This document shows, in pieces, positions 7,189-64,000 of a stretch of DNA of 64,000 nt. Below the pieces are notes generated by a model. It saw only the letters and a list, made by a program, of their open reading frames with translations. It did not search any database and was not told the origin of the DNA. Source of the DNA: Octopus sinensis (Eukaryota); the NCBI RefSeq assembly GCF_006345805.1, contig NC_043020.1, positions 10,416,001 to 10,480,000 of the forward strand, read 5' to 3'. The translations under genes were made by a program, and so were the position numbers. How positions within the stretch are numbered: position 1 is the first letter of the stretch; each line of letters starts with the position of its first letter.

Positions 7189-7562
7189 TTAAAGACTATT
7201 TAGGTATAAGCTAGAGATAGACAAGTAACTTGAGGGCATATTGGGCCTGACAAATTTCGCTTTGTTTATTTTCAAAAAGATTTCATCGTTAAATTTAAGT
7301 TTGTATTTAAACGATAATTGTACAATGGCATGTTCCGGTGTATTTAAAATGCTGGGTCTTTTCTTCATAAACACAGAATGTTTTCCATTATATTTTCTCT
7401 CCAACACCAAGGTATAAATTGCTGCAGTAGAATTTTTCGGAATGTGCAATTGCACTGTACACGATATTTCGTAAATCCCATCTTGAGGTATAAAAATGTA
7501 AGTTCCATCAACCAATTTAAAGTCGCCTTCTTCTTTCACCCACTGTAAATAAGAAGCTTCCT
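7189..7562 (-). CDS. TNF-like gene A, coding exon 4 (bulk of the TNF-homology-like domain)
   Basis: Acceptor tttttctttttcag|ag; EASYLQW...KLVDGTYIFIPQDGIYEISCTVQL...LKFNDEIFLKIN...SYLSISSL*. Carries the L-x-W, G-x-Y and L-x-x-x-D-x-I pattern of TNF-family ligands. The four exons total 657 nt = 218 aa + stop with no internal stop. Confidence 0.85.
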
Positions 7563-11135: not shown

Positions 11136-11332
11136 GCCCTTTTATATAATGTATATATATATACATATATAAATACATTATATATATATACACATATATA
11201 ATATACATATGTATATATATATAGTATATGTATATATATATATGTATTGTAATATAATATATATCTATATATATATATGTATATAATATATATATATGTA
11301 TATGTATATTGTATATGTATATATGTATAGTA

Positions 11333-11420
<88 letters not shown>

Positions 11421-11512
11421 TATTTATTAATATATATATAATATATATATAGATATATATATATATATGTATGTAAATATATCTATCTATCTATCTATCT
11501 ATCTATATCTAT

Positions 11513-11568
<56 letters not shown>

Positions 11569-11647
11569 AATATATCTATCTATCTATCTATCTATCTATA
11601 TATATATATATATATTATATATATTATATTTATATTATATGTTATAT

Positions 11648-11694
<47 letters not shown>

Positions 11695-11973
11695 ACTCAT
11701 GTCATATAAACAATTAAATAACTTATACAGAAAATAGAAAGTAAGAATTTGAATAAATACATCAATATGTGTTTCAACACATGATTTCACATCAAGAATC
11801 TTGCAAAGCAAATTCATAAACATAACAAAAGTAAAGCTACTTACCACACAGTCACTCCTACGTCTATAATGAAAGTATTTTAATTAATGCTATAACCATT
11901 GTTTAAATCTGTAACTGTAGTTATTTAAGGGGATAATTCAAATTATGAGAAAAATCTGTATAAATTTGTTTAC

Positions 11974-12021
11974 CCGACGGTGTGTAATGACTTGTTTTCA
12001 GGTGGAACATGGCATAGTAAG
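11974..12021 (-). CDS. TNF-like gene A, coding exon 3 (48 nt, (S)YYAMFHLKTSHYTPS), first strand of the TNF domain
   Basis: Acceptor ttttttttctcag| and donor g|gtaaac; phase 1 to 1. Same length as the paralogous exons in B and C. AMFHL resembles the TNF strand-A 'AHL' motif. Confidence 0.82.
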
Positions 12022-12256
12022 CTGAGAAAAAAAACAGACAGTGAGAAACATATATTTGAATACAGGTTTAATATCTGACAGAAGACTAAGACAGAAGAAT
12101 GTATTTCCTATATTGAATACTTCAGATTATCATCTAATAAATAACTATACAACATATTAACTGTAATGCAATCATTATTATCATAACGAAAATGATGTGC
12201 ATAGAGAATAATTATTTATCATTAATGAAAGAGAGCCAAGACTTTATAAATATCTA

Positions 12257-12430
12257 TATATTACACCCATCACATTGTAGTTTCATGAGCTTTGATATGG
12301 TCAGTTGTACAGCAGCGATGCCTTGCTGAGACTGATAGTACAATTCTAGCAAACATGTACAGGAGGCTTCATCCTATCAAAGTGTCATCTAAAGCCATGG
12401 TCCAGTTAATCCTTGTAGACATTTCATTCA
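12257..12430 (-). other. Highly conserved intron-2 element, copy in gene A
   Basis: 174 nt; 9 differences from the B copy and 9 from the C copy. Confidence 0.85.
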
Positions 12431-12472
12431 TATATTTAATGATGTGGGTATTTTTGCCATTTATTTCTTTAG

Positions 12473-12854
12473 TACTCTTTACTTTTTTCAGTCATTTGAC
12501 TGCGGCCATGCTGGAGCACCACCTTTAATCGAGCAAATCAGGACTTATTCTTTGTAAGCCCAGTACTTATTCTATCGGTCTCTTTTGTCAAACCGCTAAG
12601 TGACGGGGACATAAACACACCAGCATCTGTTGTCAAGCAATGCTACGGGGACAAACACAGACACACTCACATATATATATATATACATATATACGACGGG
12701 CTTCTTTCAGTTTCCATCTACCAAATCCACTCACAAGGCTTTGGTCGGCCCGAGGCTATAGTAGAAGACACTTGCCCAAGGTGCCACGCAGTGGGACTGA
12801 ACCCGGAACCATGTGGTTGGTAAACAAGCTACTTACCACAGCCACTCCTGCGCC
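12473..12854 (-). mobile_element. SINE family 1
   Basis: Reverse complement of 3609-4045. Confidence 0.85.
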
Positions 12855-13014
12855 TTAGAATGTCTCTTATTTTCAAAATTAAAAAAATTGTTGCCTATTT
12901 TAAGATTGTAATGTATCGAGGACATGTTTAGTGATTTGATTAACTCTACAATAGGTTACAGTGTTAGATAATTTTATTGAGAATATTGAAAGTGAAATTA
13001 TGAAAATAACTTAC

Positions 13015-13042
13015 ATTGTGGACGATTTGGGTGATAATTCCA
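13015..13042 (-). CDS. TNF-like gene A, coding exon 2 (28 nt, WNYHPNRPQ)
   Basis: Acceptor ttctttctactttag| (near identical to gene B) and donor caat|gtaagt; phase 0 to 1. Confidence 0.8.
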
Positions 13043-13585
13043 CTAAAGTAGAAAGAAAAGGTGAGAAAATGAAAATTAAGATCTGCTGGTGACAGGTGTT
13101 GTTTGTGTAACTTTCATCATATAATAGTCCCCTTTACTGTGTGCCACAATCTTGTTACAATTTTAACACGCACCTTGATACAGTGTTGTATTAATCTCGA
13201 AATATTAAATTTTCTGTTTGCAAAATTTCTGATAGGAAATGCCTTACATGTTTCTTCTATATTTACAATTTTGTAACCCCTATTAACAAATGAAACATGT
13301 GTAATGGTGGATAAATGATACCAAAAATTTTTCAGTTTCCTGTTCTGATATATAATTACTATAATTACTCTGCAAAAAGTATTTCCCAGAATTTTGAACT
13401 CTTATGCAAATCTTACACAAATATAACATCTACATATGGATTTGGAACACTGGTATAAGCAGATGTGCTTCAAGAGGACACAACTTGAATTTTAACCCTA
13501 TCTACATAATCTTTATATATAAAACTGAGAATGTGTGTATGTGTGTGTTAGAAAAAGCATATTTACTAACAGAAAAGTATGCTAT

Positions 13586-19435: not shown

Positions 19436-19528
<93 letters not shown>

Positions 19529-19703
19529 GTATATACATATATATATATGTATATACATATATAAATGTATATACATATATATATATGTATATACATATAT
19601 ATATATGTATATACATATATATATATGTATATATATATGTATATATATATGTATGTATATATGTATATATATATGTATGTATATATATGTATATATATGT
19701 ATG

Positions 19704-19809
<106 letters not shown>

Positions 19810-19926
19810 GAGTTACATACATACATACAGACACATACACACACACACTATGGCCATGAACTCAATTTCAAACATTCACTTTCTCATTGTTGACATTTGC
19901 TTCTATCAGGTTCGACAGTATTCCTC

Positions 19927-20030
19927 CCATGGCCACGCCCACAGATGATTGTCTCGCACTGATTTGTGTTTATATACCATCTTCTCCAACTTCTTAAGCA
20001 ATTTTCTTTCATTCTATAGCAGAGATGGAA
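19927..20030 (-). promoter_or_regulatory. Putative core promoter of gene A: TATATAAA (19976-19969) and TCA initiator (A at 19946)
   Basis: Aligns with 42231-42330 upstream of gene B, with identical TATA-to-TCA spacing and a shared GAGACAATCATCTG. Confidence 0.6.
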
Positions 20031-34423: not shown

Positions 34424-34812
34424 TTAGGGAACTTGGTCGATCGTGTATAAGCTGGTGATAGACAAATAGCTTGAGGGCGTATTGCGGCTGATGAATTTTG
34501 CCATGTTCATCCGCAAAAGGATTGCATCATTTCGTTTAAACTGGTATGCAAATGATGATTGTATCATGAAATTTTCTGATACATTTAAGGAACATGAACT
34601 TCTTTTAATATATTCATATTCCGCTCCTTTCTTTCTCTCTAACATCAAGGTAATGGTCCTCGAATGAGTATCTTCTGGAATGAACAATTGCACTGCACTG
34701 TTTATTTGGTAAACCCCATCTTGAGTTATTAAAATGGAAGTTTCATCACGCAATTTAATGTTACCTTCATCCTGGCTCTCATCTCTTTTCCAGCGTAAGT
34801 AAGTGTCTTTCT
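34424..34812 (-). CDS. TNF-like gene B, coding exon 4 (TNF-homology-like domain)
   Basis: Acceptor cctacttttacag|ag; KDTYLRW...QDGVYQINSAVQLFIP...TLMLERK...FKRNDAILLRMNMAKF...PSSYLSITSLY. Colinear with gene A exon 4 (roughly 40-45% aa identity by eye). The four exons total 954 nt = 317 aa + stop. Confidence 0.85.
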
Positions 34813-34829
34813 CTGTAAAAGTAGGTATG

Positions 34830-38300: not shown

Positions 38301-38364
38301 GAGAGAATGGGATAATTCAAATTATGAGAAAAAGTGTGCAATAAATCTGCATGACTTAGCTTAC

Positions 38365-38412
38365 CTAACTCAGTGTAACCCCTAGTTTTCAGGTGGAAGA
38401 AGGCATGTTGAA
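38365..38412 (-). CDS. TNF-like gene B, coding exon 3 (48 nt, (F)QHAFFHLKTRGYTEL)
   Basis: Acceptor ctctcttacctttcag| and donor ag|gtaagc; 33/48 nt identical to gene A exon 3. Confidence 0.82.
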
Positions 38413-39097
38413 CTGAAAGGTAAGAGAGAAAGCAGATGGTGAGAAGGTTATATTTGAATACTGATTCAGTGTCTGGCAAAAGACTAAGACAGAAGATAGG
38501 ACACTTCCTGATGTATTTCATTTATTGAATACTTCAGATTATCATCTAATAAATAACTATACAACATATTAACTATCATGCAATAATTATTATCATAATG
38601 AAAATTTTCTACATGGAGGACAATTATTCACTATTAATGAAAACAGCCAAGACTAAACATTTATATATTTATTTCTTTATTGCCCGCAGGGAGCTTAACA
38701 TAGAGGGGGCAAACAAGGGCAAACAAAGGGTTTCAGTCGATTACATCGACCCCAGTGCTTAACTGACACTTATTTAATCGACCCCGAAAGGATGAAAGGC
38801 AAAGTCAACCTCAGCAGAGTTTGAACTCAGAACATAACGGCAGACGAAATACCTATTTCTTTACTACTCACAAGGGGCTAAACACAGAGAAGACAAAAAA
38901 GGACAGACAAAGGGATTAAGTCGATTATATCGACCCCAGTGCTTAACTGGCACTTATTTGATCGACCCCGAAAGGATGAAAGGCAAAGTCAACCTCGGCG
39001 GAGTTTGAACTCAGAACGTAACGGCAGACGAAATACCATTAAGCATTTTGCCCAGCGTGCTAATGATTCTGCCAGCTCGTCGCCCTCTAAACATCTA

Positions 39098-39271
39098 TAT
39101 ATCACACCCATCACATTGTAGTTTCATGAGCTTTAACATGGTCAGTTCTACAGCAGCTATGCCTTGTTGGGACTGATAGGACAATTCTAGCAAACATGTA
39201 CAGGAGGCTTCATCCTATCAAAGTGTCATCTAAAGCCATGGCCCAGTTAATCCTTGTAGACATTTCATTCA
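39098..39271 (-). other. Highly conserved intron-2 element, copy in gene B
   Basis: 165/174 identical to the gene A copy; same position between exons 2 and 3. Confidence 0.85.
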
Positions 39272-41935: not shown

Positions 41936-42230
41936 TTTCACAGTTTCTCAACCTATAACCATAATACAGTACTTCCTCATTAATTACAACCACTTTCAAT
42001 GATTAAAATGATCACAGTCACTTTTAATCTCTTTATCTCTACCTTCTCCTCTCTTACATCCTGATCACCCACACTATCTCTCATTGTTGCAACCAAGCAC
42101 AACAAACCCATACCCCGTTTTTATCTCTCTCTCTCTCTCTCTATCCCTCTGATTTCGTATCAGATAAATGTTTGCAATGGTTGTTTGAAATCAAATGTTA
42201 AACCTGTAACATGTTTAAATAATATTTCTA

Positions 42231-42330
42231 CCATGGCCATCCCCTCAGATGATTGTCTCGCTCTGATTTGGATTTATATACCGACTTATCCAAACTCATA
42301 AGCTTATTTCTTTCATTCTAAAACAGTGAT
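42231..42330 (-). promoter_or_regulatory. Putative core promoter of gene B: TATATAAA (42280-42273) and TCA initiator (A at 42250)
   Basis: Paralogous to 19927-20030; lies ~315 nt upstream of the gene B ATG. Confidence 0.62.
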
Positions 42331-48700: not shown

Positions 48701-48940
48701 CAACCATTTTTATTTTTTGTGTAGTGATCTCCATCCCACCTGCTGTCACCTTAAGTGGCAAATGAGGTATCATGACTAAATTAACTTAACATGGATGATC
48801 GATTATAGATTTCACTCTATAAATGGATTGTATAACCTTTTAACAGTGGAATGATAAAAACGTTAGTAAAAACAAAAGTTGTAAATTTACTTTATAGTAA
48901 CAGACATACTAAAGAAATAAATGGCAAAAATACCCACATA

Positions 48941-49335
48941 GGTGCAGGAGTGGCTGTGTGGTAAGTAGCTTGCTTACCAACCACATAGTTCAGGGTTCAG
49001 TCCCACTGCGTGGCACCTTAGGCAAGTGTCTTCTACTATAGCCTCGGGCCGACCAATGACTTGTGAATGGATTTGGTAGACGGAAACTGAAAGAAGCCTG
49101 TCATATATATGTGTGTTTGTATATATATATATATATATAAATGTATATGTGTGTGTGTGTGCTTGTCCTTCAACATCGCTTGACAACCGATGCTGGTGTA
49201 TTTACGTCCCTGTAACTTAGCGGTTCAGCAAAAGAGACTGATAGAATAAGTACTAGGCTTACAAAGAATAAGTCCTGGGGTTGATTTGCTCGACTAAAAG
49301 GCGGTGCTCCAGCATGGCTGCAGTCAAATAACTGA
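48941..49335 (+). mobile_element. SINE family 1 inserted just upstream of the conserved element in paralog C
   Basis: Splits aaatacccacat|...|aatgaaatgtctac, which are ~12 nt apart in gene A. Confidence 0.85.
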
Positions 49336-49342
49336 AATATAC

Positions 49343-49515
49343 AAATGAAATGTCTACAATAATTAACTGTACCATGGCTTTAGATGACACTTTGATAGGA
49401 TGAAGCCTCCTGTACATGTTTGCTAGAATTGTACTATCAGTCTGAGCAAGGCATCGCAGCTGTACAACTGACCGCATTAAAGCTCATGAAACTACAATGT
49501 GATGGGTGTAATATA
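49343..49515 (+). other. Highly conserved intron-2 element, copy in paralog C
   Basis: Inverted copy; a 61-nt core is identical in all three paralogs. Confidence 0.85.
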
Positions 49516-49772
49516 AGGATGCTTATATAGTCTTAGCTCTCTTTCATAAATGGTTAATAATTGTTCTAGATCATTTTCCTAATAATAATAATAATGATGA
49601 TTGTGAAATGGTTAATATATTTTACAGTTATTTATTAGATGATAATCTGAAATATTAAATATATGATATACACCAGGAGGTACTCTTTTCTTTGAATAGT
49701 CTTCTGTTGATATTGAACCTATATTAAAATATATCCTTCTCACTGTCTGCTTTCTCTCTTCTTATCTTTCAG

Positions 49773-49820
49773 TTCACCATTCCTTCTTTGACTTGATAAC
49801 AGAGAGTTACAAAGATTTGG
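49773..49820 (+). CDS. TNF-like paralog C, exon 3 homolog (48 nt, (F)HHSFFDLITESYKDL)
   Basis: Acceptor ctctcttcttatctttcag| and donor g|gtgagt; 48 nt, phase 1 to 1. Flanking intron sequence aligns with A and B. Confidence 0.7.
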
Positions 49821-50379
49821 GTGAGTTAATTTATACAGATTTATTGCACACTTTTTCTCATAATTTGAATTATCCCTTTAAATAACTACTATTAAAAATT
49901 TAAGCTAATTCTTACTATTATGATATTAAGTAAAGCTAGTAGTACCCATGGTAATACCGCAGTGAATATGAAATTTTTTTAGATGGTTGGAACTTTATAT
50001 AGAGCCATAAAAATTAATTTTTTCATTTGAAATTGTATATTTTGCAATATTTTCATTTAAAAGAAGAAAACCTTTCAATTCTAGATATTTGAAGGAGTAT
50101 GACTTTTCTATTCTCATAGTAATTCAGTTATAAATATAAGTGTTTCACAATCATTACAGATGCAGCCGTATTTGGGGTAAATAAGTATACAGTGTTAATT
50201 ATGAAGAGAGTTTGACTGACAATATCATTAGATAGCTAATGATTGCTAAAGTAATGAAGGGTACAAGTACATTGGGATGCGACAAGATGATAGCGTAAAG
50301 GAAGGAGAAATTAGGGAGAAAATCTCCGGAGTACAAGAGAAGAATTTGGAGGGTGCTTGAACTAAAATTCAGGAGTAGC

Positions 50380-50530
50380 TGTGTGGTAAGTAGCTTGCTA
50401 ACCAACCACATGGTTCTGGTTTCAGTCCCACTGCGTGGCACCTTGGGCAGGTGTCTTCTACTATAGCCTTGGCCCGACCAAAGCCTTGTGAGTGGATTTG
50501 GTAGACGGAAACAGAAAGAAGCCCATAGTA

Positions 50531-50572
<42 letters not shown>

Positions 50573-50775
50573 TGTTTGTGTCTGTGTTTGTCCCCCTAGC
50601 ATTGCTTGACAACCGATGCTGGTGTGTTTATGTCCCCGTTAGTTTGCGGTTCGGCAAAAGTGACCGATAGAATAAGTACGGGGCCTACAAAAGAATAAGT
50701 CCCGAGGTCGAGTTGCTCGATTAAAGGCGGTGCTCCAGCATGGCCGTAGTCAAATGACTGAAATAAGTAAAAGAG
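50380..50775 (+). mobile_element. SINE family 1
   Basis: Sequence match. Confidence 0.85.
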
Positions 50776-50994
50776 TAATAAACAATACAATGGACATTTT
50801 TAAACAAATGGAGTGGGGCTGGTTTACGGACCCCACGAACCCCGCCTCTCACTGACCACGGTTTTGGGGCTTATCTCGCATCCACGAGAGACCTTTTATA
50901 CACGACATTCTCCCATCAAACACATTTTTACTCAGGCACCTCCTCTCCAGCCCACAGTTGTCACAGTCTTATGATATATATATATATATATATA

Positions 50995-51313
50995 GGCGCA
51001 GGAGTGGCTGTGTGGTAAGTAGCTTGCTAACCAACCACATGGTTCCGGGTTCAGTCCCACTGCGTGGCATCTTGGGCAAGTGTCTTCTGCTATAGTCCCG
51101 GGCCGACCAATGCCTTGTGAGTGGATTTGGTAGACGGAAACTGAAAGAAGCCTGTCGTATATGTGTATATATATATATATGTGTGTGTTTGTGTGTCTGT
51201 GTTTGTCCCCCTAGCATTGCTTGACATATATATATATATATATATATAAATTTGGTAGACAGAAACTGAAAGAAGCCGTCGTGTGTGTATATATATATAT
51301 ATAATATACATAC

Positions 51314-51381
<68 letters not shown>

Positions 51382-51470
51382 ATATATATATACACACACA
51401 CACGACGGGCTTCTTTCAGTTTTGTCTACCAAATCCACTCACAAGGCTTTGGTCGGCCCGAGGCTATAGT
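50995..51470. mobile_element. SINE family 1 fragments in head-to-head arrangement
   Basis: Plus copy 50995-51230, then rearranged/inverted fragments to 51470. Confidence 0.75.
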
Positions 51471-51472
51471 AG

Positions 51473-52678
51473 AAGAAATGGTATTATACGGCAGCGGGGG
51501 ACCGCAGGGAGGAGAAGGAGGAGGAGGAGGAAGAGGAGGAGGGAGAAGAAGAAGAAGAGGAGGAGGGGGAGAAGGAGGAGTATCACGTTTTATTCAATAT
51601 TTTAAAATGGACGAAAGACATTAAAAAAAATCAGTCGACGAAAATTAAACAAAGAATAATACTGAAAAATAAGAAATGGAAAAAGCCCAAAAGACTGGCT
51701 CAGTTCAATACAAAAACAGGGAATATCGCGATTTACCATTCTAGAGGGAGAATTTTGGGAAATTTGTAGAAATATTTCAAGGAAGCCCAAACATACATCG
51801 TAATACTGAGGGTGTTTGTTGGTGGCGACAGTGGTGGGAGGGAATAGTAACTAAATGTTTCTGAAGATTGGAGAGTAATGAGAAGAATTAAGCCCGCCCA
51901 ATCTGGAGGCGTGGTCTATTTCAGAATGAGGCAATTAATATAACTAAGATGACCTAAGTTCCTTCCCATATATATCACATATAATCCTTTCTGCTAATAG
52001 GCACATGATCTGAAAACAAAAGTGCTTAAAATATTTAATTTCATATATATATATAATATATATATATATATGTTTCAGCCGAAGTCGCGTCTCGCCTTCA
52101 CCTTCGAAACGCAGAGTTGATGAAACGATGGCGACTGAAGAAGGGGAATTTTCCTTGTGTTATTTGTCTTGTACTATATTTTTCCGTTGTTTAAGAAAAA
52201 TGTCCAGTTCCTTGGTTTTGTGCTTATGTTTTCGTTTCTCATTGTGTTCGACGTTTTTTTCTTGTGTGTCCTGTACCCATGTATGCATGTATATATACAT
52301 GTAGACGTAGGTACGTACATATGTGTATGTATATATGCATATGTCTTATTTATCAATTTGTTATTACACGACAGAACGCACGCATCCATTTCTAAGTAAG
52401 TTTGTTCTATACATACGCTTTACTCTTTTACTTGTTTCAGTCATTTGACTGCGGCCATGCTGGAGTACCGCCTTTAATTGAGCAACTCAACCCCGGGACT
52501 TATTCTTTGTAAGCCCAGTTCTTATTCTATCGGTCTCTTTTGCCGAACCGCTAAGTAACGGGGACGCAAACATACCAGCATCGGTTGTCAAGCAATGCTA
52601 GGGGGACAAACACAGACACACAAACAAACACACAACACACACACACACACACACACCACACACACCACACACACCACA

Positions 52679-52716
<38 letters not shown>

Positions 52717-53454
52717 CAATAATAATTCTCTAAATGAGATATAGACAGTGACTGCTCCATAACATAAGGGACATTAGCCAACTGAATATGGCTAGGGACA
52801 GGGCAGGGTGGTGGGGGTGTCACTGTTGCATTTAGCCCCAGGCGAACATCAACGTCACAGAAAGGCCGACGCATCACGGCGTCCTCTATCTTGCAAAGGG
52901 AGATCATTCCCCAAGAAGCGGATGCCACATACGGACCCAGGTTTCAAGGTGTATTGCCTATTATCAACGTATGGTAGGCACCGCTTCTCGACGAACAACT
53001 CACCGTGCAAGATATATATAAAGATTTTCAAGTAAATACATTTACTGATTTCGATCCCTAGCCATATTCAGTTGGCTAATGTCCCTTATGTTATGGAGCA
53101 GTCACTGTCTATATCTCATTTAGAGAATTATTATTGCTGTCGAACAGATTTTCGAAATCAGTAAATGTATTTACTTGAAAATCTTTATATATATCTTGCA
53201 CGGTGAGTTGTTCGTCGAGAGCGGTGCCTACCATACGTTGATAATAGGCAATACACCTTGAAACCTGGGTCCGTATGTTGGCATCGCTTCATGGGGAATG
53301 ATCTCCCTTTGCAAGATAGAGGACGCCGTGATGGCGTCGGCCTTTCTGGTGACGTTGATGTTCGCCTGGGGCTAAATGCAACAGTGACACCCCCACCACT
53401 CTGCCCTGTCCCTAGCCATATTCAGTTGGCTAATGTCCTTATGTTATTATATAT

Positions 53455-53499
<45 letters not shown>

Positions 53500-54070
53500 T
53501 AAATATTTTAAGCACTTTTGTTTTCCGATCATGTGCCTATTAGCAGAAAGGATTATATGTGATATATGGGGGAAGGAACTTAGGTCATCTTAGTTATATT
53601 AATTGCCTCATTCTGAAATAGACCACGCCTCCAGATTGGGCGGGCTTAATTCTTCTCATTACTCTCCAATCTTCAGAAACATTTAGTAACTATTCCCTCC
53701 CACCACTGTCGCCACCAACAAACACCCTCAGTATTACGATGCATGTTTGGGCTTCCTTGAAATATTTCTACAAATTCCCCAAAATTCTCCCTCTAGAATG
53801 GTAAATCGCGATATTCCCTGTTTTAGTATTGAACTGAGCCAGTCTTTTGGGCTTTTTCCATTTCTTATTTTTCAGTATTATTCTTTGTTTAATTTTCGTC
53901 GACTGATTTTTTTTAATGTCTTTCGTCCATTTTAAAATATTGAATAAAACGTGATACCCCTCCCCCTCCTTCCCCTCCTCCTCTTCTTCTTCTTCCTCCT
54001 CCTCTTCGACCTCCACCTCCTCCTCCTCCTCCTCCTCTGCAGTACACCGCTGCCGTGTAATACCATTTCT
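51473..54070. repeat. Nested fold-back: outer arms 51473-52075 / 53450-54070, inner A-B-A'-B'-A' structure 52715-53447
   Basis: Direct reverse-complement matches. Confidence 0.85.
52408..52625 (-). mobile_element. SINE family 1, 3' half
   Basis: Sequence match. Confidence 0.8.
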
Positions 54071-54079
54071 ATGACGCTA

Positions 54080-56820
54080 TTGATTGATTGATTGATTCTA
54101 GTTTCAGCTTATGAGCTGTGGCCATGCTGGGGCACCGCCATTTGGTGTTGCTACTTGGTTTCACTTCATGGAGGCTTTCTAGCAACTGCTATTTGGTGCA
54201 TGAGAGAGTTCGATGCAGCTGCCTCATCTGCCCCTCTGCCGTGAAGTTGGTTCATCTGGGAACACCTGACAGGAAGAGATCCAGCTTCATTTTAAAGACA
54301 TCTGTATCCACCCCATGCAGGTCTCTCAGGTTCTTCGGGAGGATATTGAAGAGCTGTGGGCCTCGGAAGCCCAGGCTATCACAGAATCTGTCCTACAACT
54401 TGATGGCAGGTTTGGAGTCCTAGGCACACGCAGTGGCGCCCAGTTCTGGCATTTGCGTAACTCTCGATGCCAAAGTTCAGGACACTTCCCTCCAGGATCT
54501 TCCAGATGTATATTATGGCATATCTTTCCGCCTACGCTCCAGGGAATATAATTTTAATCTCTTGAGTCTTCCCAGTAGCTTACATTCTGCATAGAGGCTA
54601 TCTTTTTGTGTAGCTTCGTTGGATCGCCTCAAGTTCTGTGATCAATTTGACACTGGATGGTGACCATAGCTGAGAGCAATAGTCAAAGTGGCTTAGACAA
54701 AGTGTCTTCCAGAGGACCATCATGGTTTCTTGTTCTCTTGTTCTAAAGGTTCTAAGAATCCATCCAGCCAGCCGTCTACATTTCATTGTCAGTTTAGCAA
54801 CATGTACCTGAAAGGTCGCGTCATCACTCATGTGAATACCCAGGTCACGCACTGATTGTGCCTCTGGGATTGCAATCCCTCCGGGTCCAGTGTATTCATT
54901 GGGTATTGCATTCAGTTTTGCATGCTGATAGTATAAGCTTGAAACTTTCCAGCATTGAACTGCATGCTATTCTTTTCAGCCCACTTGTATATTTCGTCCA
55001 GCTCACATTGCAGGTATTTAGTGTCCTCAGGGTTCTGTATTGCCTGTGAAACTTTTGTATCATCTGCATAAATTGTGATCGTGGCTCTCTGCGTGGCTGA
55101 GGGCATGTCTGACTGAGAGGGCCATTATGAACAGTAGTGGTCCCAGAACAGTGCCCTGCGGAACACCGCTCATATTGTGTATTAATGGAGGTGGCCCCAT
55201 TGGCTACTACCACCTGACTTCTATCTTCAGAAAGTCATGAAGCCATTCTCCCAGTTTTCAACTATGTTGAGATCACGCAGTTTGTGACATTATTCCATGA
55301 TCGATTTTATCAAAGGCCTTTACAAAGTCGAGATATATGACTTCCACATTTGAGTGGTGAGCATTGTTTCAGCACCAGTCATAGTGTTGTAGGAGCTGAG
55401 TTAAACAGCTTCTCCCTGGTCGGAAACCATGTTGGGGTCGGGCAGCAAGTCATTCTCTTCAAGGAAGGTGATCAGCTTCCTTCTGACTATTCGTTCCACG
55501 ACCTTGCTGATGTGTGAGGTGAGAGAGATAGGTCTATAGTTCTTGGCTTCAGCTCTGCTACCTCCTTTATGAATGGGGCATATTTTACCTTCCTTCAGTT
55601 TTCCTGGAAGTTTGCCAGCTGCAAGGAAGCTCTGAAAGAGGAACTGCAGTGGTCTTGCTAGGACTCTCTTACATGCTTTTAGGAGTTTTGCCGGGAATCC
55701 ATCGGGGCCAGTAGCTGAGTCTATTTTCATTTCATCTATAGCCTTGGTTACATCGTCTTCCTTTATATCGATGTAATCTATCGTCGCCGCCTCTGATTTT
55801 ATATCTGCAGTGGTAAAAAAAGTCAGTTGGATTGGTGATTTGGAGATGCCCAAGGGGTGGAGTGAAAACACTCTTGAATTGCTCATTCAGTATTTCACTT
55901 ACCCTCATTGGTTTTCCTGTAAGTGTGCCATCCTTTTCGAGGAGTGCCCTATTCTACAGTGCACCGTAGCTGTTTCTTTGGCATACCTGTAGAAAGCTCT
56001 GGGGTTAGATTTTATGTTTTCTATAGCCCAGGCTTCTTTGTCTGCTCTTTCTTTTCATGGGAGAGTTGCAGACATTTTCGATTTCCAACAGTTTTATTTT
56101 TAGGCGGGACTTTTCACTGCTTTCAATCTGTTTGTTTAGGCGATTTGAAAATTTCGTACGCCGTCTCATTAAAATTTTCCTCTCTCTGGGGATTTTGTTC
56201 TTGTGTACAGTGGCCTTTCTCTCTGGGACACATTTGTAGCATATGGCTTGCATTACAGACATGAATTGTTGAAGTTTCACGTCGATGTCTGGCGAGGAGA
56301 CATTTAGGCCAGTTTTGTTTGAGGATCTCTTTCTCAATTTGTTTCCAGTTTGCCTTATGGTAGTTCAAGCTGGAAAGATTTGAGGGTTCTTGTAGGCTGC
56401 ATGTCCGTGCTCTCTTTTGGCCCGTACATGGTCAGCTCTATCATGTTGTGATCCGAGAGTAGTGTCGGTGTCACTTTCACATTATGGATGAGATCCATGT
56501 CATTTGTGAAGCAGAGATCCAGTGTGTTACCTGCCCTAGTTGGTTGGAGTATTACCTGCTCCATGTACAGGGTGTTGATGAGGTTCAGGAGGGACCTCGC
56601 CTGTCCTCATTCACATCTTGTCATTCCTGGGAGAGAAAGGCCCTCGAGCCATCTGACATTGGGCAGATTGAAGTCTCCCATAAGAAGCACACCTATGTGT
56701 TGTTCTAATGTGGTTAGAATTTCTTCTATTTTCATAAGGCAGTCTTCAAACTTGCCCACATGGCTTGGGGCATCTGGAGGGCGATATGTAGCACACACAA
56801 CTACATCAAGTTGCCTAATA
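54080..56820 (-). mobile_element. CR1-group LINE, 5'-truncated, frameshifted (part of the APE endonuclease + RT)
   Basis: YRPPDA, GDFNLPN, NYRPISLTSH, GVPQGTVLGPLLF, YADDTK and DYCSQLWSP; (ATTG)n tail. Confidence 0.9.
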
Positions 56821-56990
56821 TGGCGCAGGAGTGGCTGTGTGGTAAGTACCTTGCTTACCAACCGTATAATTCTGGGTTCAGTCCCGCTGCGTGGTACCTC
56901 GGGCAAGTGCCTTCTACTATATAGTCTCGGGCCGACCAAAGCCTTGTGAGTGGATTTGGTAGACGGAAATTGAAAGAAGCCCGTCGTGTG
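56821..56990 (+). mobile_element. SINE family 1, 5' half, at the truncation point of CR1 copy 1
   Basis: Sequence match. Confidence 0.8.
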
Positions 56991-57049
56991 TCTGTGTGTG
57001 TGTGTGTCGCTTCGTCGGTTCGTTCCATCTCTTGTCCTCCATTTTAATT

Positions 57050-57057
57050 CTTATATA

Positions 57058-57122
<65 letters not shown>

Positions 57123-57390
57123 GTATATATATAATATATATATAATATATATATATATTATATTATATATATATATGTATGTATAATATATATATATATA
57201 TATATATGTATGATATATATATGTATGCATATATATAGTATGCATATATAATTATATGTATGTATATATATATGCATGTATATTTTTATGTATATTTATA
57301 TATGTATATATATATGTATGTATATATATATATATATTATATATATATATGTATGTATATATGTATATATATGATATATATATACATATA

Positions 57391-57424
<34 letters not shown>

Positions 57425-57490
57425 CTATTGTTATATATATATACATGTTTATATATATATGTGTGTGTATATATATATAATATATATATG

Positions 57491-57523
<33 letters not shown>

Positions 57524-57532
57524 GTATATATG

Positions 57533-57603
<71 letters not shown>

Positions 57604-57900
57604 GTATATATATATGTTATATATATATGTGTATATATATATGTATATATATATATGTGTATATATATATGTATATATATATACATATATATATATGTAT
57701 ATATATATATAATATATATATATATGTATATATATGTGTATATATGTATGTATATATATATGTGTATATATATATGTATATATATATGGTATATATATAT
57801 GTATATAAGTATATGTATATATATGTATATATGTATACGTATATAAATACATGCATATATATATGTACATACTACATATATATGTATATATGCATGCGTG
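57050..57900. repeat. Long degenerate (TA)n/(TATG)n microsatellite; representative of many (8600-8790, 11140-11700, 19370-19830, 22550-25250, 34075-34320, 37610-37785, 44980-45230)
   Basis: Directly visible simple repeats; source of the YI/VC/HT-repeat ORFs. Confidence 0.95.
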
Positions 57901-58219
57901 TATGGGTACAGGATATTAAAAAACGAAGACACAATGAGAAACGAGCCAGGCAACATAAAGAACATTCCCCTTCATCAGTTGTTCCCTGCTTCATCTACTC
58001 TGCGTCTCGAAGGTAAGCACAAGACGTGACTTCGTTGAAACAGTCCTTCCCGCAAAGCAAATTAAATAAAATTTGTGATTTTTTGCGGAGGGGAAAAATG
58101 GTAACGAAAAATAGGAGTCAGAAAAAAGACAGTAAAAAACAAACGGTGAGGGTCGTTAAAGCAAAACGATGTGAAGATTATGAACGCTAGAACGACGAGC
58201 TTTGAAAAGAGACAGGTAG

Positions 58220-58256
<37 letters not shown>

Positions 58257-58922
58257 AATTGAGATAGGGGTTATAAATGCAACCCTCCATGGGATAACAT
58301 ATATCCAAAATACTGCTAGTGAAGTACCCAAATGTTAATGATTGCGATGCAATCAATTCATTTACTGTATTATATGGGCAAAGGTAAAATGATTTACCAC
58401 AAATTACAAATACAAGATAAGAAAATGGAGAATTACCTATTTCTTTACTACCCACAAGGGGCTAAACACAGAGAGCATAGACAAACGGATTAAGTCGATT
58501 ATATCGACCCCAGTGCGAAACTGGTACTTTATTTATCGACCCCGAAAGGATGAAAGGCAAAGTCGACCTCGGCGGAATTTGAACTTAGAATGTAGCGGCA
58601 GACGAAATACCGCTAAGCATTTCGCCCGGCGTGCTAACGTTTTTGCCAGCTCGCCGCCTTCCGCTAATGTTGTATAATAAGTAGAATATATTATATTTAT
58701 ATTTACTTATATCTCTATTCTCTTTTATATATATTCTACTTATTATACAACATTACTCTTTTATGTACACTTTTTTATGTACATTCCTTTCTGTACACTG
58801 ATTTGTTCTGCTTTTAATATTTAACCCTACAGTCTCTTATGTGGTGGTTTAATAAAGTATGCGATTGAGAATTATCTGGTAATTGATATTTGATTTAGTG
58901 GTATTTCTCCATTTTCTTATCT

Positions 58923-58954
<32 letters not shown>

Positions 58955-59113
58955 TATAGATATATATATATATATTATATTATATCTTTATATATTATAT
59001 ATATATTATATATATATTTTTTTATTATATATATGAAAAGTAGAAAAGTATGAAAAAAAAAGTTAAAAAAGAAAAGTATATTAATATAATACATATATAC
59101 ATACACACACACA

Positions 59114-59150
<37 letters not shown>

Positions 59151-59689
59151 CAGAAATATGTTACGAAAAGAAAATATAAAATATACGTGGAAATGTAAGG
59201 GTAAAATATGAAAAATCAACGAAAATGCATATTACACATAGAAAAAGGCTATTTATGACAGGTAGTGACAAATATATACATTTAGATTGACTTAGGTAGC
59301 AATACGAGTCATGAAGGTCATTATTATGAGATGATTATAAGAAGTAAATAATAATAATAAAGTAAGAGACCGAAACGAACCAATTGGTTTAGACGTGGGC
59401 TATTCATCGTTTGAACAACACGTTTGTTCAAACGATGACTTTCATGACTCATATTACTACCTAAGTCAATCTAAATGTATATATTTGTCACTACCTGTCA
59501 TAAATAGCCTTTTTCTATGTGCAATATGCATTTTCATTGATTTTTCATATTTTATCCCTATATATATATATATATATATAGGGATAAAATATCAAAAATC
59601 AATGAAAATGCATATTGCACATAGAAAAAGGCTATTTATGACAGGTAGTGACAAATATATACATTTAGATTGACTATGTATATATATAT

Positions 59690-62600
59690 GATTTTGATTT
59701 TGATTTTGATTTTTCCAGTTTCAGCTAATGAGCTGTGGCCATGCTGGGGCACCGCCATTTGGTTTGCTACACGATTTTACATCACGGATGCTTTTTGGCA
59801 AACGCCATCTGATGCATGAGAGAGTTCGATGCAGCTGCCCTCATCTGCACCTCCTGCCGTGAAGTTGGTTCATCCGGGACACCTGACAGGAAGAGATCCA
59901 GTCCTACTTTAAAGACATCCGCATCTACACCATGCAGGTCCCTCAGGTTCTTCGGGAGGATATTGAAGAGCTGTGGGCCTCTGAAGCCCAGGCTATCACA
60001 ATATATTGTCCTACATCTTGATGGCAAATTTGGAGTTCTTGGTACTACGCAGTGGCGTCCGGTTCTGGCATGTGTGTGACTCTCGATGCCAAAGTCTAGG
60101 ACAAGACCTTCCAGGATCTTCCAGATATATATTATGGCATATCTTTCTCGCCTACGCTCCAGGGATAGAGCTTAATCTCTTGAGTCTTTCCCAGTAGCTC
60201 ATATGTGCACAGAGGCTATCTTCTTCGTGTAGCTTCGTTGGATCGCCTCAAGTTCTGTGATCAACTTGACACTGGATGGTGACCATAGCTGAGAGCAGTA
60301 GTCAAAGTGGCTTAGGACAAATGTCTTCCAGAGGACCATCATGGTTTCTTGTTCTCTTGTTCTAAAGGTTCTAAGAATCCATCCAGCCAGCCGTGTACAT
60401 TTCATTGCCAGTTTAGCAACATGTACATGAAAGGTCGCGTCATCATTCATGTGAATACCCAGGTCACGCACTGATTGTGCCTCTGGGATTGCAGTCCCTC
60501 CGGGTCCAGTGTATTCATTGGGTATTGCATTCAGTTTTGCATGCTGATAGTATAAAGCTTGAAACTTTTCAGCATTGAACTGCATGCTATTCTTTTCAGC
60601 CCACTTGTATATTTCGTCCAGCTCACATTGCAGGTGCTTAGTGTCATCAGGGTTCTGTATTGCCTGTGAAACTTTTGTATCATCTGCATAACTTGTGATC
60701 GTGGCTCTCTGCGTGGCTGAAGGCATGTCTGAGAGGGCCATTATGAACAGTAGTGGTCCCAAAACAGTGCCCTGCGGAACACTGCTCACTATTTGCGTGT
60801 TAATGGAAGTGGCCCCATTGGCTGCTACCACCTGACTTCTATTCTTCAGAAAGTCATGAAGCCATTCTCCCAATTTTCCAACTATGCCAAGATCACGCAG
60901 TTTGTGACATATCATTCCATGATCGATTTTATCAAAGGCCTTTGCAAAGTCGAGATATATGACTTCCACATTTGAGTGGTTGAGCAGTTGTTTCAGCACC
61001 CAGTCATAGTGTTGTAGGAGCTGAGTTAAGCAGCTTCTTCCTGGTCGGAAACCATGTTGGATGTCAGGCAGCATGTCATTTTCTTCAAGGAAGGTGATTA
61101 GTTTCCTTCTGACTATTCGTTCCATGACCTTGCTGATGTGTGAGGTGAGAGAGATAGGTCTGTAGTTCTTGGCCTCCGCTCTGCTACCTCCTTTATGAAT
61201 AGGGCATATTTTACCTTCCTTCAGTTTTTTTGGAAGTTTGCCAGCTGCAGGAGCTCTGAAAGAGGATCTGCAGTGGTCTTGCTAGGACTCTCTTACATAC
61301 TTTTAGGAGGATTGCCGGGAATCCATCGGGGCAATAGCTGAGTCTGTTTTCATTTCATCTATAGCCTTTATTACATCGTCTTCCTTTATATCGATGTAAT
61401 CTATCGTCGCCGCCTCTGATTTTATATCTGCAGTGGTAAAGAAGTCAGTTGGATTGGTGATTTGGAAATGCCCGAGGGGTGGAGTGAAAACACTCTTGAA
61501 TTGCTCATTCAGTATTTCACTTACCCTCATTGGTTTTCCTGTAAGTGTGCCATCCTTTTCAACGAGTGGCCCTATCCTACAGTGCACTGTAGCTGTTTCT
61601 TTGGCATACCTGTAGAAAGCTCTGGGGTTAGATTTTATGTTGTCTATAGCCCAGGCTTCTTTATCTGCTCTTTCTTTTTCATGGGAGAGTTGCAGACATT
61701 TTTCAATTTCCAACAGTTTTATTTTCAGGCGGGACTTTTCACTGCTTTCAATCTGTTTGTTTAGGCGATTCGAAATTTTGGTACGCCGTCTCATTAAAAT
61801 TTTCCTCTCTCTGGGGATTTTGTTCTTGTGTACAATGGCCTTTCTCTCTGGGACACATTTGTATCATATGGCTTGCGTTACAGACATGAATTGTTGAAGT
61901 TTCACGTCGATGTCTGGCGAGGAGAGACATTTAGGCCAGTTTTGTTTTAGGATCTCTTTCTCAATTTGTTTCCAGTTTGCCTTATGGTAGTTCAAGCTGG
62001 AAAGATTCTGAGGGTTTCTTGTAGGCTGCATGTCCGTGCTCTCTTTTGGCCCGTACATGGTCAGCTCTACCATGTTGTGATCCGAGAGTAGTGTCGGTGT
62101 CACTTTCACATTATGGATGAGATCCATATTATTTGTGAAGCAGAGATCCAGTGTGTTACCTGCCCTAGTTGTTGGAGTATTACTTGCTCCATGTACAGGG
62201 TGTTGATGAGGTTCAGGAGGGACCTCGCCTGTCCTCGTTCACATCTTGTCATTCCTGGGAGAGAAAGGCCCTCGGACAATCTGACATTGGGTAGATTGAA
62301 GTCTCCCATAAGAAGTACACTTATGTGTTGTTCTAATGTGATTAGAACTTCTATTTTTATAAGGCAGTCTTCAAACTTGCCTACAGGGCTTGGGGCATCT
62401 GGAGGGCGATATATAGCACACATAACTACATAATTGCCTTATATGTACAATTAGTGTGTCACACACCAGAGTTTGAGTATGACAAAAGGACCTGGGGTGT
62501 GAGGTCCTCACGGATGTACATAGCAACTCCTCCATGACTCCTTTCTTTTCTGTCGGTCCGTAGTACAACACACTGTGGTATGTGTAACTCCGCATCTGCT

Positions 62601-63620
62601 ATGTCCGGTTTCAGGTGCGTTTCCGTAAGTGCTATGCATAAGGCTTGATTGCATGCGACAAAGTCTCTCAAGAACGGGATTTTTGTCCTGTTACTGAGTG
62701 TTTGCAGTCCTCTGATGTTCAGTAGGAGCATCGAGGTGAGGTGTATGTTGCTCCCGGCGGTGTCCATCTTGGGTCTGTTTGCTGTGGTGGTCTTGTTTAT
62801 TGTGGGTAGTCCTACCTGCGAGCTTGGGTTTGATGAAGTCAGGTCAGCTGCTGTACAATCTTTTGTGCCATGCACAAAAAAGATTGTTGCTCAGCAGCTG
62901 CCCTTTCAACAACATCATGTTGGCGGTTTGTGGTACGCACCACATCTGCGTACCTCCGTTTTGGGGCAGGTGGTGCGTGGTCCATCCCTTTTCCTTTCGG
63001 TGGTTGGTTTCTGCGGCAGGGTCCCGGATGTGCAACACGGCAGCCTGCACCTTCCTCTCCAGGCCGGCTGGCACCTCTCAGGTAGAACCTACATACCCGT
63101 GTGCGCTGCTTGTTTCCATCCTTCTTGGCATATGGATAGTTAGGTTTGCTTCTATCCTAGGCTGTTTGGTTTTTTGGTTTTGCCTGAGTTTTAGTTTTAG
63201 TTTTTCCTCCTTTTTTGGTTCTTTCATCTCCATGTCCATGGCTTTTGGTGCCGGTAGGAGCACCCGCACTTGGGTTTACCTCCTGGGCAGGTTTCTCACT
63301 GGAGTTTTCTTCCTGGGCGTCTACCAGGTGGGAGTGACCTTTTTCATCAACGCCCGCGTCTCCATCCTTGCCATCTTTACTTTGTTCGCGTTTTTCGCTG
63401 TGAAAGATGGCATCCAGCGTGTTAATGTGCGATCTGACAAGTGCGTAGGAGCGTATAAATTCTTGCTTCTTCCGCTCTATTTGAGCTGACGTCCTTTTGT
63501 ATCCGCTGCTCTTCAGCGCAGCCGTAATTATGTTATTTGGATTTTCTCCGTCAGCGCATCACCATCCTCTCAGGAACAACGCCAGTTCGTCATTTTTCCA
63601 GGTTCTGGACATTCTTGATA
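59690..63620 (-). mobile_element. Near full-length CR1-group LINE (ORF1 with CCCH-like finger; ORF2 APE + RT), frameshifted
   Basis: LLNIRGL...ALTETHL...RSHGGVAMY (APE); ORF 60199-61125 has HGFRPGRSCLTQLL, YLDFAKAFDK and SYADDTK; ORF1 has CRFYLRG...GCRVAHPGPC; (GATTTT)n tail. Confidence 0.9.
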
Positions 63621-64000
63621 TTTTATCTATCTATCTATCTATCTAATTATATTAATTTATATTAATCTAATAGTGCAATAGGGGGTAGGGAAGAAATAGA
63701 GAAAGAGAGCGTCTATGTACTTAAGGAGAGATTGGGAGCCGAAAGAAGAGAGTAAGAGAGAAGAGGAAGAGGAGAGACTGAGAGATTAAGAGCTGAGAGA
63801 GGAGAGTAAGAAAAGAAGAGAGTAATGAAGAGACAAGGAGAAGCGTGAGGGAGAGAACTGAGGAGACAGAGAGAGAAGGAAGAAATAGAGAAAGAATATA
63901 TATATCTGTCCGCAGAAGATTTCTAAACGAAACTAATTGCACACACACAAACAGCTAAATAAAACACAAATATATACACATGTATACATATACATATATA

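What the first reader, a model, noticed from the sequence alone, without database searches (positions are those of the whole stretch)
12257..12430. Intronic element far more conserved than the exons, in all three paralogs (also 39098-39271 and 49343-49515)
Seen: the 174-nt block in intron 2 differs at only 9 positions A-B and 9 positions A-C. A 61-nt core (CCATGGCTTTAGATGACACTTTGATAGGATGAAGCCTCCTGTACATGTTTGCTAGAATTGT) is identical in all three. Neighbouring exon 3 is 33/48 identical A-B and the TNF domains are under half identical. SINEs inserted right beside the block in A, B and C but not inside it. It matches no other repeat in the window. Inference: strong purifying selection on a non-coding function (enhancer, splicing or editing control element, intronic RNA) or repeated gene conversion of this tract.
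Basis: partly seen in the sequence, partly recalled or inferred. Interest (0 to 1): 0.78.

Follow-up and report, generated by a model that had tools for sequence, protein, structure and literature searches.

The report
Intron tract homogenised by gene conversion
The near-identical 174-base intron block shared by three neighbouring octopus TNF-like genes is real, but it is kept alike by copying between the gene copies (gene conversion), not by selection for a hidden function, so it is an ordinary feature of a tandem gene family.

Summary
The window is Octopus sinensis CM016882.1:10416001-10480000, a cluster of TNF-homology-domain (THD) genes. The block differs at 9 (A-B), 10 (A-C) and 17 (B-C) of 174 positions, and a 61-nt core is identical in all three copies. 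The block is the best-kept part of a larger alignable unit that runs from exon 2 through intron 2 and exon 3 into the first ~70 nt of intron 3.

Between true orthologues the block is not slow. Gene A against O. bimaculoides LOC106876236 shows 9.8% divergence in the block, 9.8% in the core and 9.8% in 1014 flanking intron sites (p=1.0). THD dS is 0.13.

Flanks and exon 3 group copies by orthology. The block groups the same-genome paralogues A, B, C and D (triplet tests p=0.015-0.0004).

Elsewhere in the family the block is deleted, split by a MITE or SINE, lost, or ectopically multiplied.

There is no Rfam match, no excess folding, no covariation, no open frame and no pairing with exon 3.

Verdict: short-tract interlocus gene conversion in an intron, with exons staying distinct, as in primate red/green opsin genes. 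Strong purifying selection is not supported. Interest is low.

The parts
12257..12430 (-). Block copy A, in intron 2 of LOC115223891 (THD gene A). The 61-nt core is 12340-12400.
39098..39271 (-). Block copy B, in intron 2 of LOC115224014 (THD gene B, protein P0007). The core is 39181-39241.
49343..49515 (+). Block copy C, in inverted orientation relative to A and B. The core is 49372-49432. The tract where C stops grouping with its own lineage and groups with A/B lies within about 49363-49515.
11903..12458 (-). Alignable unit of gene A downstream of the SINE: rest of intron 2, the block, exon 3 (11974-12021) and the first ~70 nt of intron 3. It continues upstream of the SINE at 12860-13130, including exon 2 (13015-13043).
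12459..12859 (.). SINE inserted in intron 2 of A, 28 nt from the block edge.
38306..38662 (-). Unit of gene B downstream of its SINEs: intron 2 remainder, exon 3 (38365-38412) and the start of intron 3.
38663..39087 (.). Two tandem SINE copies inserted in intron 2 of B, 10 nt from the block edge.
48940..49337 (.). SINE inserted in intron 2 of C, 5 nt from the block edge. Homologous intron resumes at 48896-48939.
49516..49903 (+). Unit of gene C downstream of the block: intron 2 remainder, exon 3 (49773-49820) and the start of intron 3.
7189..7562 (-). THD (TNF-homology domain) exon of gene A, used as the coding yardstick.
34424..34816 (-). THD exon of gene B. The 5' boundary is approximate.

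Best explanation
The block is an ordinary stretch of intron 2 in a tandem cluster of fast-evolving octopus TNF-like (THD) genes. Short tracts of roughly 150 nt of non-allelic (interlocus) gene conversion have repeatedly overwritten it between neighbouring paralogues. A break or heteroduplex in one copy is repaired from another copy on the same chromosome. A, B and C lie within 40 kb, D and E just upstream, and C is inverted.

The exons on either side are not homogenised. Either selection for different proteins removes converted alleles, or their accumulated mismatches stop tract extension. The intron tract therefore ends up far more alike than the exons. High identity in turn makes the tract the best substrate for the next conversion.

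Shown: the phylogenetic conflict between block and flanks, the neutral rate between orthologues, and disrupted, lost or multiplied blocks in relatives. Inferred: the repair mechanism, why this part of the intron is the favoured tract, and the role of selection in keeping exons apart.
For: 1. Orthologue rate. A against O. bimaculoides LOC106876236 (same private indels, exon 3 92% identical, introns collinear) gives block 17/174 = 9.8%, core 6/61 = 9.8% and flanking introns 99/1014 = 9.8%, Fisher p=1.0. THD dS is 0.132. C against its probable orthologue Obi4 gives block 11.3% and flanks 16.4%, p=0.13.

2. Distances. In flanks and exon 3 the nearest neighbour is the orthologue (A-Obi3 11.8% and 8.3%; Ovu1-Obi1 13.2% and 6.2%). 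In the block A is nearest to B, C and D (5.2-5.7%), although their flanks differ by 16-25%.

3. Triplet sites, counted as A=paralogue versus A=orthologue. Block: 13:5 (B), 15:8 (C), 12:5 (D). Flanks: 18:30, 14:39, 15:50. Exon 3: 1:12, 0:16, 0:12. Fisher p=0.015, 0.002, 0.0004.

4. Mosaic boundaries. Fifteen sites in downstream intron 2 support A+B against C+Obi1+Obi2. None does so inside alignment columns 546-699, where A=B=C differs from the O. bimaculoides copies.

5. Footprints of ectopic exchange. O. vulgaris intron 2 of the Obi1 orthologue carries three block segments of different paralogue types.

6. Dispensability. There is a 56-nt core deletion in Obi2 and a 289-nt MITE with an 8-bp target duplication inside the core in Obi4. 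The resident O. vulgaris copy has a deletion plus SINEs inside. The unlinked O. vulgaris paralogue has lost the block. Its O. bimaculoides orthologue is deleted, SINE-split and 12-20% diverged.

7. Precedent. [quoted passage not shown]
Against: Block divergence is also lower than flank divergence in non-orthologous comparisons between species (9-13% against 17-27%). It is mildly lower in the unlinked copy too (12-20% against 18-26%). This needs either conversion before the species split or some weak constraint.

A 33-nt stretch is identical in A, B, C, D, one O. vulgaris copy and Obi1.

My permutation version of Sawyer's run test is only nominally significant (best pairwise p about 0.01 over 28 pairs).

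A converted block makes the 'orthologous' distance an upper bound, so a modest constraint could be hidden. Only two to three species and no population or expression data were available.
Confidence: 0.8

Rival explanations
1. The block is a cis-acting element (intronic enhancer, splicing enhancer for the tiny exons 2 and 3, or a shared regulatory site) under purifying selection. Gene conversion only helps to spread the favoured version.
For: The block is less diverged than its flanks in deep paralogue comparisons across species and, mildly, in the unlinked copy. A 33-nt stretch is identical across six copies in three species. Exons 2 and 3 are 29 and 48 nt, a size that often depends on intronic enhancers (established knowledge; exon sizes).
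Against: Between orthologues the block and its core diverge exactly as fast as 1014 flanking intron sites and about as fast as synonymous sites. The core is deleted, split by a MITE or SINE, or lost in five family members whose reading frames are still intact. The block lies more than 200 nt from either splice site.
Confidence: 0.12
2. The block encodes an intron-hosted structured RNA (snoRNA, miRNA precursor or another small RNA), or is the intronic partner of an ADAR editing duplex with exon 3.
For: Its intronic position, length of about 170 nt and high identity prompted the idea. Cephalopods edit RNA heavily (established knowledge).
Against: No Rfam family matches at gathering score, and none up to E=10 other than chance CRISPR-repeat hits. 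Single-sequence fold z-scores are +0.74 and +0.81. Alignment fold z-scores are +0.17 and -0.36 over eight copies. Only short AT-rich inverted matches exist to the exon 3 region, and they are not shared between A and C.
Confidence: 0.03
3. The block is a young mobile element or a recently duplicated segment that entered each gene independently.
For: High identity, with SINE insertions clustering at its edges.
Against: In every copy it sits at the same place in intron 2, with homologous intron on both sides, in three species. It has no terminal repeats or target duplications. There is no copy outside THD-gene intron 2 in the window or in about 225 kb of related loci. It shares no sequence with the window's repeats.
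Confidence: 0.02
4. The intron evolves neutrally and the contrast is entirely due to accelerated, positively selected exons, as in venom and conotoxin genes, with no conversion.
For: The exons are fast. A-Obi3 THD dN/dS is 0.81. Exon 2 differs at 8/29 positions between orthologues against 9.8% for intron. Paralogue THD dN/dS is 0.5-0.6.
Against: This explains slow-looking flanks but not the block. Paralogue block distances (5-6%) are below the orthologue distance (9.8%), and the block tree conflicts with the flank tree. Rate variation alone cannot produce that.
Confidence: 0.03

Closest known systems
Intronic gene conversion between the primate X-linked red and green opsin genes (reviewed in PMC3924837, which cites Shyue et al. 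1994 and Zhou & Li 1996)
   Same: These are tandem paralogues. Intron sequence is more alike within a species than between orthologues. Exons group by orthology because functional differences are kept. The result is a mosaic of low and high divergence along the gene.
   Different: Here the family is larger (at least five linked copies plus an unlinked one) and one copy is inverted. The homogenised tract is only about 150 nt in the middle of one intron. Which exon differences are selected is unknown.
Mosaic divergence from interlocus gene conversion in tandem arrays such as Arabidopsis halleri HMA4 (bioRxiv 10.1101/2025.10.29.685298), and long-lasting concerted evolution in mammalian gene pairs (PMC2720389)
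   Same: Effective conversion rates vary within genes and give mosaic divergence among tandem copies. Paralogues are more alike than orthologues in the converted stretches.
   Different: I read only the abstracts of these two papers. The octopus copies are much older (paralogue THD dS 0.45-0.8) and only a short non-coding tract is still exchanged.
Conserved non-coding or ultraconserved elements
   Same: A long run of identical bases in non-coding DNA next to variable exons.
   Different: The defining property, slower change than neutral DNA between orthologues, was tested and not met. The element is also broken or absent in several family members.

Membership tests
Interlocus gene conversion / concerted evolution tract | Within the tract, paralogues of one genome are more alike than orthologues of different species. 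| tested here: met
   In the block, A-B is 5.2%, A-C 5.7% and A-D 5.7%, against A-Obi3 (orthologue) 9.8%.
Interlocus gene conversion / concerted evolution tract | Sequence outside the tract gives the orthology tree, so the tract and its flanks are phylogenetically incongruent. | tested here: met
   Flanks and exon 3 give A nearest Obi3 and Ovu1 nearest Obi1. Triplet tests of block against flanks give p=0.015, 0.002 and 0.0004.
Interlocus gene conversion / concerted evolution tract | A discrete tract is detectable as an over-long run of shared polymorphic sites (Sawyer/GENECONV type test). | tested here: inconclusive
   The longest runs fall in the core (A-C columns 87-161, p=0.010; C-Ovu1b p=0.016). 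They are not significant after correction for 28 pairs. Site patterns do give sharp edges at columns 545/546 and 699/700.
Interlocus gene conversion / concerted evolution tract | Donor and acceptor are physically linked; an unlinked copy escapes homogenisation. | tested here: met
   A, B and C lie within 40 kb. D and E are 10-45 kb upstream on the same chromosome. The copy on another chromosome is 12-20% diverged with a deletion, or lost.
Conserved non-coding element under purifying selection | The substitution rate between orthologues is lower than in neighbouring neutral sequence. | tested here: not met
   9.8% against 9.8% (p=1.0) for A-Obi3. 11.3% against 16.4% (p=0.13) for C-Obi4.
Conserved non-coding element under purifying selection | The element is retained intact wherever the host gene is retained. 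| tested here: not met
   It is deleted, interrupted or lost in Obi2, Obi4, the resident Ovu1 copy, and the L007 and L008 copies.
Intronic structured RNA (snoRNA, miRNA, other Rfam family) | A match to a covariance model, or a stable fold supported by covariation. | tested here: not met
ADAR editing-site complementary sequence | An extended duplex between the intronic element and the edited exon. | tested here: not met
   Only 12-21 nt AT-rich partial matches were found, and they are not conserved between copies. Editing itself is not testable here.
Transposable element / dispersed repeat | Copies at unrelated loci, with terminal repeats or target-site duplications. | tested here: not met
   There is no copy outside THD-gene intron 2 in about 290 kb examined. 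A genome-wide count was not possible with these tools.
Unannotated coding or cassette exon | An open frame kept across copies, and presence in transcripts. | tested here: not met
   Every frame on both strands has at least one stop in every copy. The block is absent from the only transcript contig available (L003).

The most novel reading that the evidence does not exclude
The block is a functional module shared by the cluster, for example a common intronic enhancer or a site that itself initiates recombination or conversion. Weak selection together with conversion keeps it alike across the linked THD genes, and individual genes can lose it because neighbours supply the function.
Probability: 0.12. 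Interest if true: 0.5.

Novelty: new member of a known kind. Interest (0 to 1): 0.2.

Why it matters
The result mostly serves as a caution. In tandem gene families, an 'intron more conserved than the exons' within one genome is the expected footprint of interlocus gene conversion plus fast-evolving exons. It should not be read as a constrained element without an orthologue comparison.

It also documents that an octopus-specific cluster of TNF-like ligand genes evolves quickly. The orthologue THD dN/dS is about 0.8, and the small stalk exons change faster than intron. The cluster still exchanges short non-coding tracts, which is of modest interest for cephalopod immune-gene evolution and for annotating this cluster.

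Tried and rejected
- **Rfam.** Searched at gathering score over the whole window and at E up to 10 around copy A. Only chance CRISPR-repeat hits appeared.
- **Folding.** Single-strand folds of both strands have z-scores of +0.7 and +0.8. RNAalifold on eight copies gives z +0.17 and -0.36. A first attempt timed out.
- **Reading frames.** No frame stays open in any copy. A 9-codon upstream ORF with a good Kozak context in the core changes by non-synonymous steps in Obi1, so I dropped it.
- **Exon pairing.** An inverted-repeat search for pairing with exon 3 gave nothing conserved.
- **Transcription-factor motifs.** TCF/LEF-like CTTTGAT, GATA-like TGATAG and forkhead-like TGTTTGC are visible in the core. 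They are 6-7-mers with no test available here, so I gave them no weight.
- **Paralogue dS as a neutral yardstick.** Nei-Gojobori dS (0.45-0.8) and four-fold sites (12-36%) disagree and rest on few sites. I relied on orthologue comparisons instead.
- **Protein look-ups that failed.** P0001 and P0007 are not on record as gene products.
- **Data handling.** Only the first locus of a batched look-up is saved for scripts, so L005 had to be imported through a bulky alignment and L006 and L008 pieces pasted by hand.
- **Searches not possible.** No collection here holds cephalopod genomes for a DNA search, so a genome-wide copy count could not be done.

Full report
**Where the window comes from**

The window is 100% identical over 27 kb to Octopus sinensis chromosome record CM016882.1. 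It corresponds to positions 10416001-10480000.

Gene A is LOC115223891, a type II membrane protein with a TNF-homology domain (THD). It lies on the minus strand. Its coding exons are:
- exon 1: 17186-16980
- exon 2: 13043-13015 (29 nt)
- exon 3: 12021-11974 (48 nt)
- THD exon: about 7562-7189

Gene B is LOC115224014 (protein P0007), also on the minus strand. Copy C is on the plus strand. It has an open exon 3 (49773-49820), but no THD exon lies in the 14 kb of window downstream.

**Checking the observation**

They differ at 9 (A-B), 9 plus one gap (A-C) and 17 (B-C) of 174 positions. The quoted 61-nt core is identical in all three. No other copy exists in the window, even at three mismatches over a 33-nt probe. 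The block shares nothing with the window's repeats.

Exon 3 is 33/48 identical A-B. The THD exons are 46% identical in protein.

A SINE lies within 5-28 nt of the block in each copy, and none lies inside.

The block is not an island, however. After the SINEs are removed, the whole stretch aligns among the copies. In A this runs from about 100 nt upstream of exon 2, through intron 2 and exon 3, to about 70 nt into intron 3. The intron parts are 72-87% identical. The block is the best-kept part of this unit. The two small exons are among the worst-kept parts.

**What the block is not**

- Rfam gives no family at gathering score. Only chance hits appear at E up to 10.
- Neither strand folds better than shuffled sequence, with z-scores of +0.74 and +0.81.
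- An alignment fold over eight copies gives z-scores of +0.17 and -0.36.
- All six frames carry stops in every copy.
- The block has no conserved complementarity to exon 3 or its surroundings.
- It is absent from the one transcript contig of the family that I could fetch.

**Relatives from other loci and species**

Protein searches with the THD exons found the rest of the family. Look-ups returned their genomic loci. The block occurs at the same place in intron 2 in these genes:

| Copy | Species | Gene / locus | State of the block |
|---|---|---|---|
| D, E | O. sinensis | Genes just upstream of the window (L006) | Present |
| Obi1 | O. bimaculoides | LOC106873363 | Present |
| Obi2 | O. bimaculoides | LOC106872472 | 56-nt core deletion |
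| Obi3 | O. bimaculoides | LOC106876236 | Present |
| Obi4 | O. bimaculoides | Next paralogue (L009) | Split by a MITE |
| Ovu1 | O. vulgaris | Orthologue of Obi1 (L004) | Three segments |
| Obi_U | O. bimaculoides | Paralogue on another chromosome (L008) | Degraded |

**The decisive comparison**

Obi3 is the orthologue of gene A.
- The two share private deletions in intron 2 and intron 3.
- Exon 3 is 92% identical.
- The introns align collinearly for about 3 kb.
- The THD is about 80% identical in protein (25 of 125 residues differ).

Between these orthologues the divergences are:

| Region | Differences | Divergence |
|---|---|---|
| Block | 17/174 | 9.8% |
| 61-nt core | 6/61 | 9.8% |
| Flanking intron | 99/1014 | 9.8% |

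The Fisher test of block against flanks gives p=1.0. Synonymous divergence in the THD exon is 0.132, with dN/dS 0.81. So the block changes at the neutral rate between species.

A second probable orthologue pair, C and Obi4, gives 11.3% in the block against 16.4% in the flanks (p=0.13).

**Evidence for exchange between copies**

In the flanking intron and in exon 3, each copy's nearest relative is its orthologue. A-Obi3 is 11.8% and 8.3% diverged. Ovu1-Obi1 is 13.2% and 6.2%.

In the block, A is nearest to B, C and D of its own genome (5.2-5.7%). Yet their flanks differ by 16-25%.

I counted sites where A agrees with a same-genome paralogue but not its orthologue, and the reverse:

| Region | vs B | vs C | vs D |
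|---|---|---|---|
| Block (paralogue : orthologue) | 13:5 | 15:8 | 12:5 |
| Flanks | 18:30 | 14:39 | 15:50 |
| Exon 3 | 1:12 | 0:16 | 0:12 |

Fisher tests of block against flanks give p=0.015, 0.002 and 0.0004.

In the five-copy alignment, 15 sites in downstream intron 2 unite A+B against C+Obi1+Obi2. None does so inside columns 546-699. There A=B=C stands against the O. bimaculoides copies. This marks a tract of about 150 nt in which C carries A/B-type sequence.

A permutation run test places the longest shared runs in the core, but it is only nominally significant.

In O. vulgaris, intron 2 of the Obi1 orthologue holds three block segments:
- an E-like 5' half
- a complete C/D-like copy whose core equals that of A/B/C
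- the resident copy, with an internal deletion and SINEs inside it

This arrangement is a direct footprint of ectopic exchange.

**Is the block needed?**

- Obi2 lacks 56 nt of the core.
- Obi4 has a 289-nt MITE with an 8-bp target duplication (CTTTAGAT) inside the core.
- The resident O. vulgaris copy is deleted and interrupted.
- The unlinked O. vulgaris paralogue has lost the block altogether. A palindromic MITE sits in its place, while the rest of intron 2 is still recognisable.
- Its O. bimaculoides orthologue keeps a copy with a 41-nt deletion and a SINE in the 5' part. That copy is 12-20% diverged from the cluster copies.

These genes keep open reading frames.

**Interpretation**

The data fit short-tract interlocus gene conversion among linked paralogues. 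The exons stay distinct because the proteins evolve fast (paralogue dN/dS 0.5-0.6, orthologue 0.81) and converted exon alleles are not kept.

This is the pattern described for primate red/green opsin genes. There, introns are homogenised within species and exons group by orthology (PMC3924837).

**What remains open**

The block is somewhat less diverged than its flanks even in non-orthologous comparisons between species, and also in the unlinked copy. A 33-nt stretch is identical in six copies. Conversion before the species split explains this. A weak constraint cannot be excluded with two or three species and no functional data. I put that alternative at about 0.12.

**Verdict**

The 'strong purifying selection' reading is not supported, and the 'repeated gene conversion' reading is. 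The finding is a new example of a known process, and its interest is low.

Noticed in passing
window 19919-19999 and 42223-42303 (minus strand): An 81-nt stretch 83% identical between genes A and B, about 2.7 kb upstream of A's start codon. It contains a TATATAAA box followed about 25 nt later by CAATCATCTG. This is probably the shared core promoter or 5' UTR exon of the THD genes. It has no match in the O. bimaculoides locus L002.
   Followed up: partly
window 49821-64000: Copy C has exon 3 with an open frame and good splice sites, but no THD exon in the 14 kb downstream. That stretch is filled with SINEs, microsatellites and reverse-transcriptase ORFs (for example 55401-55886, 60199-61125, 61303-61794). 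C is either a truncated gene or has a very long TE-filled intron 3.
   Followed up: partly
window 13015-13043 and 11974-12021; L005 13935-13963: The two tiny stalk exons change faster than the introns around them. Exon 2 differs at 8/29 positions between orthologues against 9.8% for intron, and varies in length (29-44 nt) among paralogues. Exon 3 is 58-75% identical among A, B and C. This suggests diversifying selection on the stalk between the membrane anchor and the THD.
   Followed up: partly
L004 32263-33440 (O. vulgaris OX597837.1): Intron 2 of the LOC115223917 orthologue holds three partial block copies of different paralogue types plus three tandem SINEs. The gene model there spans 33 kb. 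This could be real ectopic recombination or partly an assembly or annotation artefact.
   Followed up: partly
L009 23355-23643 (O. bimaculoides); L007 9083-9243 (O. vulgaris): Two different MITE-like elements are present. One is 289 nt, with CAGGGGTTTTCAAA terminal inverted repeats and an 8-bp target duplication. The other is a roughly 160-nt near-perfect palindrome. Both lie at the block position.
   Followed up: no
L002 22315-27667 / L009 10001-26261: The 315-aa O. bimaculoides product LOC106872472 (P0006) joins the first half of one THD gene to exon 3 and the THD of the next paralogue. It looks like a fused gene model rather than a real protein. A further THD exon lies inverted at L009 32029-32391.
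   Followed up: no
window 11143-11694, 19436-19807, 57052-57891: Long imperfect AT/TATA-type microsatellite arrays share 80-85% identity with each other. They dominate the window's self-similarity.
   Followed up: no
window 12459, 38663/39087, 49337; L008 about 7910: Independent SINE insertions cluster within a few to 30 nt of the block edges in four different copies. This hints at a preferred insertion site (an AT-rich target) next to the block.
   Followed up: no
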